From IMG/VR virus record IMGVR_UViG_3300024054_000362, positions 157,423 to 221,422 of that record: 64,000 nt of DNA, one strand, 5' to 3'. The position numbers and the translations under genes were made by a program. This document shows, piece by piece, positions 56,201 to 64,000 of this stretch (positions are counted from its first letter, which is position 1; each line of letters begins with the position of its first letter). The notes below the pieces were generated by a model, which was not told the DNA's origin, made no database searches, and saw nothing but the letters and a program-made list of their open reading frames with translations.

Positions 56201-56692
56201 GTGATTCTCGGCGTTACGGGACATCGACCCGATAAGATCGGCGGCTACGACGACGACGCCAACCCGCTACGCAGCTGGGTTCGTGGACAGATTCGTCGAC
56301 ACCTACAAACGTTTCGGCCGCTGTACGGCATCAGCGGGATGGCGCTCGGAACGGATCAAGATTTCGCCGCTGCCTGCGTCGAGCTGGGCATTCCGTTCAT
56401 CGCCGCCGTGCCGTTCAAAGGTCAGGAGCTGGCGTGGCGATCGCATCCGACGTCGCGCAAGAGGTATCGCGAGCTGATTGCGAAGGCTTACGAGGTCGTG
56501 ATCGTGAGTGAAGGTGGTTACGAGAATTTCAAAATGCAGGTGAGGAACGAGTGGGTCGTGGATCATTGCAACGCGATGTTGTGCGTGTTCGACGGTTCAC
56601 CCGGCGGAACGGCAAACACCGTCAACTACGCTGACCGCGTTCGCCGTGACAAGATCCGTATCAACCCTCGGGACTTTCAGGCGGCCGTGTGA
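56201..56692 (+). CDS. YspA/DUF1273 SLOG-family protein
   Basis: VTGHRP, SGMALGTD, RNEWVVD, DGSPGGT. Confidence 0.85.
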   Translation: MILGVTGHRPDKIGGYDDDANPLRSWVRGQIRRHLQTFRPLYGISGMALGTDQDFAAACVELGIPFIAAVPFKGQELAWRSHPTSRKRYRELIAKAYEVVIVSEGGYENFKMQVRNEWVVDHCNAMLCVFDGSPGGTANTVNYADRVRRDKIRINPRDFQAAV

Positions 56693-60277: not shown

Positions 60278-60430
60278 CGTCGAGTGATCTCGCCGCGGTT
60301 CGTTCGCATCATAGGCTTGACTTGTCAGGTACATCTGCGAAACGTTCAGTTCCAGTAGAGAACGGCTTGACTCGTCGAAGTCGTGCGTGAGAGGTTCAGT
60401 TCGAGTAGAGCGCGACAATTTAGGGAGCAC

Positions 60431-62536
60431 ATGAAGAGCACGAGGCTAGGGCCTCGGTCACTCACTGCCCGTAGGGTTCGGGACGTTGAGCGACCACTGG
60501 TCGAGGACATTCTTGCGACCGCAGATCGTGGAGCCGCTCTCGCCGTAGCGTTCGGTGCGCAGGAAACTCGCGCTGTCTGTCTTTGGTCGGATATCGGCAA
60601 GGCATCCGAGTCCTGGCAGATCCAGCAACGCGGGTCGAAGTACGGCCTACGTATTAACCATGTTGGATTAGGCGTTTGGCACACCTTACGCGTTCCCGGC
60701 ATCCCGTCCATGCAACGATTGGCAATCGCTGTCGCGATCGCCGGTCACCATGGTGGTCTCCCAGACGCAAGTTACCTACCTGCACTGGCAGATGAGAGCG
60801 CACCGCTTCGAGAGGCGCTGATCGATCTTCCCGACGAGATCACTGCCCTTCCCGTAATGCGACAACGTCGGTTCGCAAACGCGACGCATTTGTTCATGTT
60901 CACGCAGATGATCGCGTCGGCACACATCGACGCCGACTGGCAAAACGCGGCGGAATGGGAGCGAGAAGTCTGTGGTGCGCCCATCACACGACCTTCGTAT
61001 CCGAGCATCGAACAGCTCTACCGACAGTTGGAGAGCGTGTGCAGTGACACACGGCTCGATCGGAGCGATCTCCGTACTGCGTTCCGTTTGCACTATCTAA
61101 GTGCCGCTGAACGTGTTCCGGGGTTCTATTCGTTCTCAGCCCCTCTCGGTGCGTTCAACGTCGAAGCCTTGGCGCTGTACGGGCTGGCACACGCGCGACG
61201 CAACGCACGAGAAAGGGTCATCCTTGTCTGTTCGACGCAGATGATGTTCGAAGAGTGCACAGACAAGCTTCGTGCCTCTCTCGGAGACGCATTCGCAGAG
61301 CCCGCCGCGTTCGACGTCCAAAGTTGTGGGTTCAGTCCTCGTGTCGAGACCTGGGACGCTCCTGTCGTCGTTACCGCGCTTCGAGATTTCTTAGGGCTCC
61401 TCTTTGACAATCGTCCAGCGTCTCTGCGACGTTTCCATCACCTCGCACGCGCAGTGGTCGTTGTCGTCGACGCACAACAGATCCCGTTGCCCGTGCGCAC
61501 GTTGACCCGCGAAGCGTTACAAGTACTCGTTGATCATTTCCACGCTTCGGTGTCGCTCGTGTCGGCGGTCCCCTACGGAGTCGCGGAGGACGATCGACCA
61601 GAGTTGTTGGGGCCAAAGGACGCCTTCAACACGGTCTACGGAGAGATTCAGACCACATGGCCCGATCATCACGAACCGTTACCCTCCGCCGTACAGATCG
61701 CACACGAGATCGCCGAGCACGCTGAGTGTTTGACGGTTCTCCAAGATGCATCCAGATTGCGTGAGGTAGCACAAGCGATGAGGGCGTACGTCCCCGACGT
61801 CCAGGTCACTGCCGTGTCGTCTCGGATGTGTGCTGAACATCGTCGTGCGGTGATACGTAACCTTCGTGGAGGGTGTATCATCGCCGACGAAATCGGGAGT
61901 GCTCTCGCGAGGACGTTCAATACGGTCCTGTGTGAGATGACCGAACTGCCGACCATGGCCGCTGCTGCCTGTCGTGCGTTTGGTGACGGTCAGCGGCGTG
62001 CAAACTTCAAAGTTCTTCTCTCGACGAGACGTACGGCTGGAGCTGTCGTCACGCACCTCATGTGGCGAGGTCGTTCAACACTGGCGTTTCAGGATCCCGC
62101 AACCTGGCGCGAGTACTTTCTGGACTTGCGCTCCGGGGTTCTACCAAACGATCGGCAGTGGGCCGACGCTCGTCAGGCGGACGTCGAGTGTCTTCGGTTC
62201 CGAACACTGGCCGCGGAAATGTTGCGTGTCGGCAAACGCTGCGCGGCACCTGTGAGCCTTGGGTTGGGAGAAGCCAGCCTAGTCCCGGTCGTCGTTCCTA
62301 TGCCACTGCCGAGGGGTGGCTCCAGACCGGCGACCAAAGCCTTGATCGACAGGCTTCGTGCAGACGGTTCAAGTCAAGAAATTCTACGTCGACTCATGAG
62401 CTACGTCGTGTGGATCTCCGTCGACGAGCGCACACAACTTCTTCGCGACGGTCATGCTGTCTGGGTCAGCGAGGCCGTGGTCTATGTGATCAACGAGCTT
62501 CTGTACGATGAATTTGGGCTGAAGCCACTAGCCTAG
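60431..62536 (+). CDS. cas3: type I-C Cas3 homologue, catalytically degenerate
   Basis: IAGHHGGLPD, IDADW, ETWDAPVVVT, SRMCAEHR and YD..FG match I-C Cas3; HD reads SD, Walker A reads APLGAFNV, Walker B reads VDAQ. Confidence 0.85.
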   Translation: MKSTRLGPRSLTARRVRDVERPLVEDILATADRGAALAVAFGAQETRAVCLWSDIGKASESWQIQQRGSKYGLRINHVGLGVWHTLRVPGIPSMQRLAIAVAIAGHHGGLPDASYLPALADESAPLREALIDLPDEITALPVMRQRRFANATHLFMFTQMIASAHIDADWQNAAEWEREVCGAPITRPSYPSIEQLYRQLESVCSDTRLDRSDLRTAFRLHYLSAAERVPGFYSFSAPLGAFNVEALALYGLAHARRNARERVILVCSTQMMFEECTDKLRASLGDAFAEPAAFDVQSCGFSPRVETWDAPVVVTALRDFLGLLFDNRPASLRRFHHLARAVVVVVDAQQIPLPVRTLTREALQVLVDHFHASVSLVSAVPYGVAEDDRPELLGPKDAFNTVYGEIQTTWPDHHEPLPSAVQIAHEIAEHAECLTVLQDASRLREVAQAMRAYVPDVQVTAVSSRMCAEHRRAVIRNLRGGCIIADEIGSALARTFNTVLCEMTELPTMAAAACRAFGDGQRRANFKVLLSTRRTAGAVVTHLMWRGRSTLAFQDPATWREYFLDLRSGVLPNDRQWADARQADVECLRFRTLAAEMLRVGKRCAAPVSLGLGEASLVPVVVPMPLPRGGSRPATKALIDRLRADGSSQEILRRLMSYVVWISVDERTQLLRDGHAVWVSEAVVYVINELLYDEFGLKPLA

Positions 62537-62663: not shown

Positions 62664-63299
62664 ATGAAACGGAGCAGTGTACTTGCACTACGCGCAATGG
62701 GGCGGCGCGCGTGTTGGACGAACCATCTTTGTCGTGTCGAACGACAGACATACGACATTCCTACGCCGTCTGGCGCTGTAGGGGTGTTCGAAGCTGTCAA
62801 TTGGCATCCCGGAATGCATTGGGAGCTGCACAAAATCTGGGTACTCAAGCCCATTCAGCACTTTTCACTGCGCACGAACGAGGTGAAGTGTTTCGCAGGC
62901 CGCCAGCCAATCAACATCGACAGCAATCGGACGCAGCGCAATACCGTCGGGCTCTACGACGTCGACTACATCTTCGAGGCCAGCTTCGTACTGGACGCGC
63001 GTGCGTCTCACGACGTCGCGACCAACGAAGACATCTTTCGTCGGCGCGTCAAGAACGGTGCCTGCTATCACACGCCGTATCTGGGGATGCACCCCTTTAT
63101 CTGTGACGTGATGGCGCCGCCTGCCCAGTATACGCCGATTCGCCTGAGTCGGAGTTTTGGGCGAATGTTGTACGGGTTCGACTACACGAATAAGAAGCCG
63201 ACGCCGCTCTACTTCGAAGCCTCGATGGAGAACGGTGTCGTGCAGATCCCTTCGCGTGAATACGTTCTTCAGAACCAAGGGATCAACCATGTTCCGTGA
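62664..63299 (+). CDS. cas5: type I-C Cas5 (Cas5d/Cas5c)
   Basis: ACWT...VERQTYDIPTPS, W.P, VLKPI, RTNEV, RTQR..L.DVDY, PYLG, GRMLY. Confidence 0.92.
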   Translation: MKRSSVLALRAMGRRACWTNHLCRVERQTYDIPTPSGAVGVFEAVNWHPGMHWELHKIWVLKPIQHFSLRTNEVKCFAGRQPINIDSNRTQRNTVGLYDVDYIFEASFVLDARASHDVATNEDIFRRRVKNGACYHTPYLGMHPFICDVMAPPAQYTPIRLSRSFGRMLYGFDYTNKKPTPLYFEASMENGVVQIPSREYVLQNQGINHVP

Positions 63300-64000
63300 G
63301 TTGTACGAATTCGCCCAGCGCAACCGATTAGCAGACCCCGGCTTTCAGAATCGATTCGTCCATTACGAGATCGTCCTCGACGAGAACGGTCGATTGATCT
63401 CAGGACATCGGATCGACGCAGAAATGCGCGCCCCCATGATGCCGAACAGGGCTGGTACCATCGTCCGTCCACAAGCTTGCATCGAATCGGTGCAGTACAT
63501 CCTTGGGCACGTCCTCGCAAAGCCGGGGGAGGACCCGCACAAGAAGCAAGAGCGTGCAGTGATTCTCTTCCGGGGACACTACGCGCACGTACACCGTATG
63601 GCGGAGGAAACCGGCGATCCCTACGCTCGGGCGTTGGCCAACTTCGTACGAGACGTCGACAATGGTGTCTATGGTCCGCCTCAACAGGCCGCCGAACGCT
63701 GTTTGGGATGGACATCTGTCGACGAACCGCTTACCGGCAGTGAGTGGTGTGTCTTCGCCGTCAAGGAACCGGATCAGCCGAAGTACTACATCCACGATCG
63801 GCCGGCGGTCTCACAGTGGCTTCGCGCGAACCGGCCCACTGCCGACAGCGACGTTGTTATCACATGCGCTGTGACAGGTCGCCAAGACAAACTCTGTATG
63901 ACGTGGAACAAGGTCAAAGGCATTCCTGGTACGCAAGGGTCAACTCTCGTTTCGTACAACCATGCCCCGTGGACTTCCTACGGCTTCGACCAAGGGGAAA
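63289..64000 (+). CDS. cas8c: type I-C Cas8c (Csd1), truncated by window end
   Basis: MFRELYEF..PGF...IVLDENG; YILG; CAVTG...KVKGIPG..LVSYN...SYGFDQGE; not in the ORF track because no stop codon occurs in the window. Confidence 0.85.
   Translation, partial: MFRELYEFAQRNRLADPGFQNRFVHYEIVLDENGRLISGHRIDAEMRAPMMPNRAGTIVRPQACIESVQYILGHVLAKPGEDPHKKQERAVILFRGHYAHVHRMAEETGDPYARALANFVRDVDNGVYGPPQQAAERCLGWTSVDEPLTGSEWCVFAVKEPDQPKYYIHDRPAVSQWLRANRPTADSDVVITCAVTGRQDKLCMTWNKVKGIPGTQGSTLVSYNHAPWTSYGFDQGE

What the first reader, a model, noticed from the sequence alone, without database searches (positions are those of the whole stretch)
62664..63299. Cas5c appears to lack its pre-crRNA processing triad
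Established: Cas5d uses a Tyr/Lys/His triad (Y46, K116, H117 in B. halodurans). By eye, the YW position reads NW here (EAVNWHP) and the KH position reads TN (VATNEDIFRRR). If correct, this Cascade cannot mature its own crRNA and may borrow or sequester host crRNAs, or use pre-made guides. This is independent support for a disarmed or decoy system.
Basis: partly seen in the sequence, partly recalled or inferred. Interest (0 to 1): 0.7.

Follow-up and report, generated by a model that had tools for sequence, protein, structure and literature searches.

The report
Phage Cas5c without its RNase triad
A 221-kb lake-water phage carries a type I-C CRISPR system whose Cas5c is well folded but has lost all three residues that normally cut guide RNAs, and its Cas3 has lost its enzyme motifs too, so the system probably binds DNA without cutting it; how its guides are matured is unknown.

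Summary
ORF 62664-63299 (+) is a true Cas5c (TIGR01876 112 bits against a cut-off of 85; AF2 pLDDT 97; TM 0.83 to D. vulgaris Cas5c). The Tyr/Lys/His positions read N46, T120 and N121. None of these residues occurs at its position in the 150 nearest family representatives. The sequence is identical in four independent lake metagenome assemblies from 2018 and 2025.

- Tyr and His are naturally variable. L/K/F, as in the working N. lactamica system, is common.
- The "invariant" Lys is missing in 11 of 150 relatives. One of these sits in a complete cas3-cas5-cas8-cas7-cas4-cas1-cas2 locus with a regular array.
- The phage has its own array of 44 units just after cas7, with an I-C hairpin and 5' handle. 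It does not need borrowed guides.
- The "disarmed" context holds. Cas3 has lost every ATPase motif and two HD histidines. Cas1, Cas2, Cas4 and Cas6 are absent.

Best reading: Cas5c is kept as the handle-binding Cascade subunit of a nuclease-free DNA binder. Its canonical RNase centre is gone, and residual non-canonical cleavage is not excluded. Al-Shayeb et al. 2020 already noted altered Cas5 active sites in a huge-phage I-C variant, so this is a new variant of a known kind.

The parts
62664..63299 (+). cas5c, 211 aa. The fold is intact and the canonical Tyr/Lys/His positions read N46/T120/N121.
   Evidence: TIGR01876 112.4 bits and PF09704. PDB alignments. AF2 pLDDT 97.2. Foldseek TM 0.83 to 8dej_A and 0.77 to 4f3m_A.
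62799..62801 (+). Codon AAT = N46, at the place of B. halodurans Y46, S. mutans Y50 and the D. vulgaris His. It is followed by the conserved W47, then by H48 where 100 of 150 relatives have Lys.
   Evidence: PMC3973291 and PMC8524198.
63021..63026 (+). Codons ACC AAC = T120 N121, at the place of the Lys-His pair (B. halodurans K116/H117, S. mutans K120/H121), at the start of helix 118-131.
60383..62536 (+). cas3-like gene, 717 aa. It is a Cas3 homologue with degenerate catalytic motifs: HD 'LWHDxGK' reads 'LWSDIGK', the N-terminal HD His is lost, Walker A 'PTGGGKT' reads 'PLGAFNV', motif II 'DEvQ' reads 'VDAQ', motif III 'TATQP' reads 'SAVPY', and motif VI 'QAAGRCNREG' reads 'AAACRAFGDG'.
   Evidence: Only the Cas3_HD family matches, weakly. 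Alignments to N. lactamica Cas3, to a canonical I-C Cas3 and to 33 homologues.
63289..64000 (+). The 5' part of cas8c (Csd1). It overlaps the cas5c stop and is cut by the contig end. It continues at G000:C1:~1-1296, and is intact as a 670-aa ORF in a sister contig (L008:10626-12638).
   Evidence: PF09709. The contig ends join with a 5-bp gap. TIGR01863 158.6 bits on the full-length protein.

Best explanation
**What it is.** This is the Cas5c subunit of a phage-borne type I-C CRISPR-Cas variant that has lost its enzymatic residues. The locus runs cas3-like, cas5c, cas8c, cas7, then an array of 44 units, and has no adaptation genes.

**Shown.**
- The protein is a full-length, confidently folded Cas5c.
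- It keeps the handle-intercalating Trp (W47) and most conserved core and basic residues (R27, R89, Q91, R92, R127, R128).
- All three canonical catalytic positions are replaced (N46, T120, N121).
- Several neighbouring conserved charged residues are replaced as well (R39V, K48H, R/K98Y, R143H, E144P).
- Its closest relative, at about 50% identity, also lacks the Lys. The loss is therefore old and the protein has been maintained since.

**Inferred.**
- Cas5c is retained for its structural job: binding the 11-nt 5' handle and nucleating Cascade on the phage's own crRNAs.
- The canonical general acid-base RNase centre is lost or badly crippled.
- Together with the motif-dead Cas3, the complex would act as an RNA-guided DNA binder that silences or blocks targets, not as a DNA shredder.
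- crRNA maturation would then come from a non-canonical route. One option is slow, positioning-driven self-cleavage using other residues, for which the clade-specific H48, H52 and H116 are candidates. The other is trimming by a host or unrecognised phage RNase.
For: - Family membership and fold.
- Replacement of the triad, unique among 150 representatives.
- Lys described as the only invariant triad residue, and K120A, H121A and Y50A inactive in S. mutans Cas5c: PMC8524198. K116A and H117A inactive in B. halodurans Cas5d: PMC3973291.
- Shared derived losses in the query and P0003.
- The phage's own array, with the hairpin 92% paired against 10-43% in slid controls, a G before the expected cut and a conserved I-C handle.
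- Cas3 motif losses.
- No Cas1, Cas2, Cas4, Cas6, CasE or Csy4.
- Long intact ORFs despite only 27-50% identity to their nearest relatives, which argues for selection rather than decay.
- Identical sequence in samples from 2018 and 2025.
Against: - No biochemical or transcript evidence was available. No RNA run was listed, so loss of activity is an inference from residues.
- Cas5c and Cas6 active sites are plastic. L/K/F Cas5c works (10.1101/2023.08.05.552134).
- Lys-less Cas5c sits in complete I-C loci with regular arrays and no Cas6 nearby.
- The phage encodes no other recognisable crRNA endonuclease.
- Its repeats keep exactly the features a Cas5c-type enzyme needs.
- Cas5c normally stays on the handle it has just made, so cleavage in trans by another Cas5c is mechanistically awkward.
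- No spacer target was found, so no activity of the system is demonstrated.
Confidence: 0.5

Rival explanations
1. Cas5c is still the pre-crRNA endonuclease and uses a remodelled active site. Candidate residues are the histidines around the old site: H48, H52 and H116, which are shared with its closest relative, and H143. Catalysis would be single-turnover and driven by substrate positioning.
For: - The phage has no Cas6, CasE or Csy4.
- The repeats keep the hairpin, the G and the 11-nt handle.
- The family shows co-varying triad solutions: YKH 41, FKY 25, LKY 16, LKF 15.
- Lys-less Cas5c occurs in complete loci.
- H52 and H116 are rare in the family (6% and 5%) but are shared by the query and P0003.
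- Al-Shayeb et al. made the same argument for a huge-phage I-C variant (PMC7162821, Extended Data Fig. 9).
Against: - No Lys, Tyr or His remains at any canonical position.
- Four further conserved basic residues near the groove are lost.
- The relocation statistic is weak: K at 116 in 2 of 11 Lys-less against 4 of 139, p = 0.06.
Confidence: 0.3
2. Maturation happens in trans. Either a host type I-C Cas5c or a housekeeping RNase cuts the phage pre-crRNA, and the phage Cascade, or the host's, then takes up the products.
For: - The handle GGATAGAAAC with a preceding G is common in bacterial I-C arrays of many lineages.
- Al-Shayeb et al. proposed that phage CRISPR loci use host Cas proteins (PMC7162821).
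- S. mutans Cas5c mainly reads the cut site and the downstream handle (PMC8524198).
Against: - No bacterial array with the phage's GATC-rich stem was found among the listed hits.
- The host is unknown.
- A host Cas5c would stay on the handle and seed host Cascade, which would make the phage Cas5c redundant.
- The phage system would work only in hosts that carry type I-C.
Confidence: 0.12
3. The locus is a decaying or non-functional remnant, or serves as a dominant-negative decoy against a host I-C system. In the decoy case, dead subunits would poison host Cascade or Cas3 or tie up host pre-crRNA.
For: - Catalytic residues are lost in both enzymes.
- There is no adaptation module.
- The array is irregular, with spacer lengths of 12-132 nt and some repeat units that have lost the handle.
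- No spacer targets were found.
Against: - All four cas ORFs are intact despite deep divergence.
- Non-catalytic core residues are conserved, and the model has pLDDT 97.
- The Lys-less state is shared with a relative at about 50% identity.
- Most repeat units keep the hairpin and the handle.
- No test of a decoy function was possible.
Confidence: 0.08

Closest known systems
Canonical Cas5c/Cas5d pre-crRNA endoribonucleases (B. halodurans 4F3M, S. mutans 4R0J, X. oryzae 3VZI, D. vulgaris 7KHA/8DEX, N. lactamica 8G9T)
   Same: - Same family by HMM.
- Same fold, an RRM plus a C-terminal sheet (TM 0.71-0.83).
- Same operon position between cas3 and cas8c.
- Conserved W47 and the FxRR motif.
- An adjacent array with an I-C type hairpin and 11-nt handle.
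   Different: - The Tyr/His, Lys and His/Tyr positions read N, T and N, a combination seen in none of the 150 nearest representatives.
- It also lacks the conserved R39, K48, R/K98, R143 and E144.
- It is encoded by a phage.
Type I-C variant of huge phages (Al-Shayeb et al. 2020, Nature; PMC7162821, Extended Data Fig. 9)
   Same: - Encoded by a huge phage.
- No Cas1 or Cas2 and no Cas6.
- A Cas5d-like Cas5 whose proposed active-site residues differ from the canonical ones.
- The authors already note that processing might persist.
   Different: - That system is described as having 'a helicase protein instead of Cas3' and a co-resident CasPhi locus.
- Here the partner is a recognisable Cas3 homologue with dead ATPase and HD motifs, and only one array was found.
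- The sequence relationship to those phages was not tested.
Non-catalytic Cas5 subunits of other type I subtypes (for example Cas5e of E. coli Cascade, 4QYZ/4TVX)
   Same: It would work the same way if the RNase is dead: Cas5 binds the 5' handle and nucleates Cascade without cutting RNA. PMC8524198 notes that these proteins lack the triad.
   Different: - Those systems have a dedicated Cas6 endonuclease. None is found here.
- Structural similarity is much lower (TM about 0.5).
- This protein is a Cas5c by descent.
Nuclease-free, binding-only class 1 effectors (type IV-A with DinG, CRISPR-associated transposon Cascades, engineered I-C CRISPRi without Cas3)
   Same: A Cascade without a working nuclease or an adaptation module, carried on a mobile element. 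Silencing rather than cleavage is plausible.
   Different: - Those systems keep an active crRNA endonuclease (Cas6 or Csf5).
- They have either lost Cas3 or replaced it.
- Here a full-length pseudo-enzyme Cas3 is retained.

Membership tests
Cas5c/Cas5d (TIGR01876, PF09704) | Profile HMM score above the curated cut-off | tested here: met
   TIGR01876 112.4 bits against a cut-off of 85. PF09704 62.2 bits against 23. The TIGR02593 N-terminal domain scores 33.6 bits.
Cas5c/Cas5d (TIGR01876, PF09704) | Modified RRM plus C-terminal twisted beta-sheet fold | tested here: met
   AF2 with a 141-sequence alignment gives pLDDT 97.2. Foldseek gives TM 0.83 to 8dej_A, 0.81 to 8g9s_N and 0.77 to 4f3m_A.
Cas5c/Cas5d (TIGR01876, PF09704) | Catalytic triad: Tyr (or His) at the end of helix 1, and Lys-His (or Lys-Tyr) at the start of helix 3 | tested here: not met
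   The positions read N46, T120 and N121. Among 150 representatives, Lys is present in 139 and none has N, T or N at these positions.
Cas5c/Cas5d (TIGR01876, PF09704) | Residues that bind the 5' handle (the intercalating Trp and conserved basic residues) | tested here: inconclusive
   W47, R27, R89, Q91, R92, R127 and R128 are kept. R39, K48, R/K98 and R143 are replaced. The attempt to model RNA binding was not folded.
Cas5c/Cas5d (TIGR01876, PF09704) | Metal-independent cleavage of the repeat at the 3' base of the hairpin | not testable with these tools
   No RNA run was listed for the array. A biochemical assay is required.
[quoted passage not shown] | Gene set cas3, cas5c, cas8c and cas7 in one operon, with no cas6 | tested here: met
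   No Cas6, CasE or Csy4. Cas7 is circularly permuted.
[quoted passage not shown] | Cas3 with an HD nuclease and SF2 helicase motifs | tested here: not met
   HD reads SD and the motif I His is lost. Walker A, motif II, motif III and motif VI are all degenerate against 33 homologues. No helicase Pfam domain is detected.
[quoted passage not shown] | Adaptation module cas4-cas1-cas2 | tested here: not met
   PF01867, PF09827 and PF01930 have no match in the 221-kb genome.
[quoted passage not shown] | CRISPR array with a hairpin repeat ending in an 11-nt handle of the xGGAUxGAAAC type | tested here: met
   There are 44 units at G000:C1:2742-6215, with a 9-bp stem and then G + YGGRUAGAAAC. Repeats are 36 nt and heterogeneous, and the spacing is irregular.
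Huge-phage type I-C variant (Al-Shayeb 2020) | Phage-borne; lacks Cas1, Cas2 and Cas6; Cas5d-like Cas5 with altered active-site residues | tested here: met
   A virus record of 221 kb.. PMC7162821 was read.
Huge-phage type I-C variant (Al-Shayeb 2020) | A distinct helicase in place of Cas3, a co-resident CasPhi system, and sequence relatedness to those phages | not tested
   Here the partner is a degenerate Cas3 homologue. Only one array was found in the genome. The published sequences were not at hand for comparison.

The most novel reading that the evidence does not exclude
A huge phage maintains a completely 'de-enzymatised' type I-C system: an RNase-site-less Cas5c, an ATPase- and nuclease-dead Cas3 kept as a structural partner, a circularly permuted Cas7, and a 44-unit array. 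It would act as a natural dCascade that silences host or rival-phage genes. Its guides would be matured without the canonical Cas5c chemistry, either through a new active-site solution in Cas5c or through an unrecognised RNase. A still bolder variant, which the evidence does not exclude, is that the dead subunits act as dominant-negative inhibitors of a host I-C system.
Probability: 0.3. Interest if true: 0.75.

Novelty: new variant of a known kind. Interest (0 to 1): 0.5.

Why it matters
In type I-C, Cas5c is the only crRNA-processing enzyme. A maintained Cas5c with none of the three catalytic residues, next to its own large array, gives one of two outcomes. Either it reveals a new way to make I-C guides, through a new active site or an outside RNase, or it shows a phage running a guide-dependent system that relies on its host.

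Together with the motif-dead Cas3, it would be a natural example of a Cascade turned into a pure DNA binder. That bears on how phages use CRISPR against hosts and rivals, and on compact CRISPRi tools.

The survey also shows that the Lys called 'invariant' in Cas5c is absent from about 7% of the nearest family representatives, including one in a complete locus. This qualifies a textbook statement.

Tried and rejected
- **Single-sequence AF2 model.** pLDDT 40, unusable. It was replaced by the alignment-based model.
- **Complex prediction of Cas5c with a repeat RNA.** The job was counted but not folded. It is no evidence either way.
- **RNA sequencing runs for the array.** None was listed, so crRNA ends could not be read.
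- **Spacer targets.**
  - No match of the whole array in 50,697 phage records.
  - No self-targets in the phage genome beyond chance 13-19-mers.
  - Two spacers scanned in IMG/VR hit only the sister contig.
- **Another crRNA nuclease or an adaptation gene in the genome.** Cas6 (two families), Csy4, CasE, Cas1, Cas2 and Cas4 all gave no match. The neighbouring ORFs show no RNase domain.
- **More members of the query + P0003 clade.**
  - P0003 lies only on contigs of about 1.1 kb.
  - The metagenome scan returned only the same phage and canonical relatives.
- **Relocated Lys at position 116.** Enrichment among Lys-less sequences is weak (p = 0.06; with K/R/H, p = 0.018) and depends on gap placement. 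I keep it only as a lead.
- **Compensatory changes in the repeat stem.** My first impression did not hold. The stem is 92% paired, but covariation does not exceed the shuffles. The variation lies mostly in the loop and at wobble positions, and the commonest repeat has a C-A mismatch.
- **Host identification from the repeat.** The handle is widespread in bacterial I-C arrays, but no listed array shares the phage stem.
- **Per-unit promoters in the array.** No sigma-70-like site was found.
- **Searching the genome behind L164 for Cas6.** The record is not held.
- **Residue-by-residue alignment to B. halodurans 4F3M.** It could not be displayed, because it ranks below the five alignments shown. 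The mapping rests on W47, on the ungapped N-terminal match and on the other solved homologues.

Full report
**What is at the coordinates.** The ORF at window 62664-63299 (+) encodes a 211-aa protein preceded by a GGGAGAG ribosome-binding site. It is a Cas5c. TIGR01876 ('type I-C CRISPR-associated protein Cas5c') scores 112.4 bits against a curated cut-off of 85, PF09704 scores 62 bits, and the Cas5 N-terminal domain model scores 33.6 bits. Its best matches among solved structures are the Cas5c chains of the N. lactamica, M. succiniciproducens, D. vulgaris and X. oryzae systems, at E about 1e-29. A single-sequence AF2 model was useless (pLDDT 40). With a 141-sequence alignment (A2) the model has pLDDT 97.2. 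It superposes on D. vulgaris Cas5c at TM 0.83, on N. lactamica Cas5 at 0.81 and on B. halodurans Cas5d at 0.77. The public gene call for this protein starts at M51 (P0001, 161 aa). The homology, the model confidence and the ribosome-binding site all support the longer form.

**The observation.** 'EAVNWHP' is residues 43-49 and 'VATNEDIFRRR' is residues 118-128. In the phmmer alignments, N46 sits on the residue before the conserved Trp. That residue is His in D. vulgaris and M. succiniciproducens and Leu in N. lactamica. T120-N121 sit on K-H in D. vulgaris and M. succiniciproducens and on K-F in N. lactamica.

The anchors are solid:
- W47 is present in 143 of 150 relatives, and the literature places it next to Y46 in B. 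halodurans (PMC3973291).
- V118-R128 aligns without gaps to the 'VAKYRDQFRRR' type.
- In the model, N46 closes helix 35-45 and T120/N121 open helix 118-131. These are the places given for Tyr50 and Lys120/His121 of S. mutans Cas5c (PMC8524198).

The sequence is identical in contigs of four independent runs from 2018 and 2025 and in two other assembled contigs.

**How unusual it is.** An exhaustive HMMER search found 1,763 relatives, and the best 150 representatives were aligned.

| Position | Residues in the 150 representatives |
|---|---|
| 46 | Y66, F36, L32, H9 |
| 120 | K139, A6, V2, Q1, E1, D1 |
| 121 | Y50, H46, F25, V12, A6 |

N, T and N are each unique to the query at these positions. 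The commonest combinations are YKH (41), FKY (25), LKY (16), LKF (15) and YKV (12).

- Tyr and His are dispensable as such. The literature says so (PMC8524198). N. lactamica Cas5 is L/K/F, yet its system interferes and represses from a CRISPR array in E. coli and human cells with only cas5, cas7, cas8, cas11 and, for interference, cas3.
- The Lys that PMC8524198 calls the only invariant triad residue is missing in 11 of 150 representatives.
  - One is P0093 ('AEAYRDQF', confirmed against 3VZI). It lies in a complete cas3-cas5-cas8-cas7-cas4-cas1-cas2 locus of an NCBI genome, followed by 11 identical repeats.
  - Another is P0033, which lies beside cas8c, cas7, a Cas3 with helicase domains and 13 identical repeats.
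  - Other phage-borne Cas5c mostly keep the Lys (13 of 15).

The query is still the extreme case. It has no Lys, Tyr or His at any of the three positions. It also departs from the family at other conserved charged positions: R39V, K48H (the equivalent K52A is strongly impaired in S. mutans), R/K98Y, R143H and E144P. Its only close relative, P0003 (about 50% identity, known only on contigs of about 1.1 kb), shares V39, H48, H52, Y98, H116, P144 and the loss of K120 and R143. The loss therefore predates their divergence, and the protein has been conserved since. That argues against a pseudogene.

**Surroundings.** The window is the last 64 kb of a 221,422-bp virus record, found in lake-water metagenomes. 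A sister contig shows that the record's two ends join with only 5 bases missing. cas8c, which starts at window 63289 and overlaps the cas5c stop, continues at the start of the record and is an intact 670-aa ORF. The locus order is cas3-like (60383-62536), cas5c, cas8c, cas7 (G000:C1:1381-2562), then a CRISPR array (G000:C1:2742-6215).

The array has 44 units that end in GGRTAGAAAC. Most fold into a 9-bp hairpin followed by G and the 11 nt YGGRUAGAAAC. This is the layout of canonical I-C repeats, and the handle differs by one base from UGGAUUGAAAC. The handle GGATAGAAAC is also common in bacterial I-C arrays. The stem is 92% paired against 10-43% in slid controls, but covariation does not exceed shuffles. 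The variation is mostly in the loop. Spacing is irregular (spacers of 12-132 nt, mode 36-38), and a few units have lost the handle. That pattern fits an array that is no longer renewed. The genome has no Cas1, Cas2 or Cas4, no Cas6, CasE or Csy4, and no second Cas5 or second array.

**The partner enzyme is also stripped.** The 717-aa protein upstream is a Cas3 homologue, at 27% identity to canonical I-C Cas3 over most of its length. Only the HD family matches, and weakly. Compared with N. lactamica Cas3 and 33 homologues:

| Motif | Consensus | This protein |
|---|---|---|
| Walker A | PTGGGKT | PLGAFNV |
| Motif II | DEvQ | VDAQ |
| Motif III | TATQP | SAVPY |
| Motif VI | QAAGRCNREG | AAACRAFGDG |
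| HD | LWHDxGK | LWSDIGK |

The N-terminal HD histidine is also gone, while GHHGGLPD and DAD are kept. A 717-codon frame with no stop at this divergence implies selection for something other than catalysis. This supports the 'disarmed' picture independently of Cas5c.

**How it most likely works.**
- Shown: a well-folded Cas5c lacking the canonical catalytic residues, in an operon whose Cas3 lacks its catalytic motifs, next to its own I-C-type array.
- Inferred: Cas5c is retained as the 5'-handle-binding subunit that nucleates Cascade on phage crRNAs. The complex binds targets without degrading them, and maturation follows a non-canonical route.

I give about 0.5 to 'the canonical RNase is lost or crippled and the system is a binder'. 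The main rival, at about 0.3, is that Cas5c still cleaves with a remodelled site. The evidence for that rival is as follows:
- The phage encodes no other candidate nuclease.
- The repeats keep everything a Cas5c needs.
- The family shows several alternative triad solutions.
- Lys-less members occur in complete loci.
- H52 and H116, rare in the family, are shared by the query and P0003.
- Al-Shayeb et al. argued the same for a huge-phage I-C variant (PMC7162821).

Processing in trans by a host I-C Cas5c or a housekeeping RNase gets about 0.12. It is possible, but Cas5c normally stays on the handle it produces, which makes it awkward. A decaying remnant or a dominant-negative decoy gets about 0.08 and is not excluded.

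**Comparison with what is known.** By descent and fold this is a Cas5c. It fails the family's catalytic-triad criterion, so I file it as a divergent, probably non-canonical member rather than as a 'pre-crRNA endonuclease'. Functionally it may resemble the non-catalytic Cas5 of other type I subtypes, but those have Cas6. The closest published precedent is the huge-phage type I-C variant of Al-Shayeb et al. 2020. That system has no Cas1, Cas2 or Cas6, its Cas5 active-site residues are 'to some extent different', and it has a helicase instead of Cas3. Whether this phage belongs to that group was not tested. The combination seen here appears to go beyond that description:
- complete replacement of all three positions, including the Lys;
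- a retained but motif-dead Cas3;
- a circularly permuted Cas7;
- a large heterogeneous array.

I therefore rate it 'new variant of a known kind'.

**Limits.**
- No RNA data were available.
- The RNA-protein complex prediction was not folded.
- No spacer target was found.
- The host is unknown.
- Only the top 150 of 1,763 family hits could be tabulated.

Noticed in passing
window 60383-62536 (+): The Cas3 homologue (717 aa) has lost Walker A (PLGAFNV), motif II (VDAQ), motif III, motif VI and two HD-site histidines (LWSDIGK, and the N-terminal His). It remains one long open frame and looks like a pseudo-enzyme kept for a structural role.
   Followed up: yes
G000:C1:1381-2562 (= L003:1381-2562), just beyond the window across the contig junction: Cas7 (393 aa) is circularly permuted relative to canonical I-C Cas7. 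Residues 62-252 align to canonical 109-293, and residues 285-336 align to canonical 15-64. The N-terminal 60 residues or so are low-complexity, with a CAACGG x7 repeat.
   Followed up: partly
G000:C1:2742-6215 (L003): The CRISPR array has 44 handle-bearing units with heterogeneous 36-nt repeats. Blocks of identical variants occur and the loop is highly variable. Spacer lengths are irregular (12-132 nt), and several units have lost the handle. No targets were found.
   Followed up: partly
window 63289-64000 and G000:C1:1-1296: cas8c is split by the ends of the record. A sister contig (IMGVR_UViG_3300044996_000468) shows that the ends join with only 5 bases (ACTCC) missing. The genome is therefore circular or circularly permuted, although it is labelled 'linear'. 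A GCTCAGGCC x6 repeat (Ala/Gln-rich) lies near the 3' end of cas8c.
   Followed up: yes
L164:10001-10687 (P0093) and L011:10001-10714 (P0033): Cas5c proteins that lack the 'invariant' Lys (F/A/Y type) occur in bacterial type I-C loci with regular arrays. One locus is complete, with cas4-cas1-cas2. In all, 11 of the 150 nearest representatives lack the Lys.
   Followed up: partly
window 62814-63299: The public gene call for cas5c (P0001, 161 aa) starts at M51. It omits the conserved N-terminal 50 residues, which include N46. The longer ORF from 62664 is supported by homology, by the ribosome-binding site and by the model.
   Followed up: yes
window 56201-56692 (+): A 163-aa ORF matches the YpsA SLOG family (PF06908, 34.9 bits), with a weaker match to DprA (PF02481, 23.2 bits, below its cut-off of 29.6). 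It lies a few kb upstream of the cas locus. The other small ORFs between 54.3 and 60.3 kb have no Pfam family above the curated cut-off.
   Followed up: no
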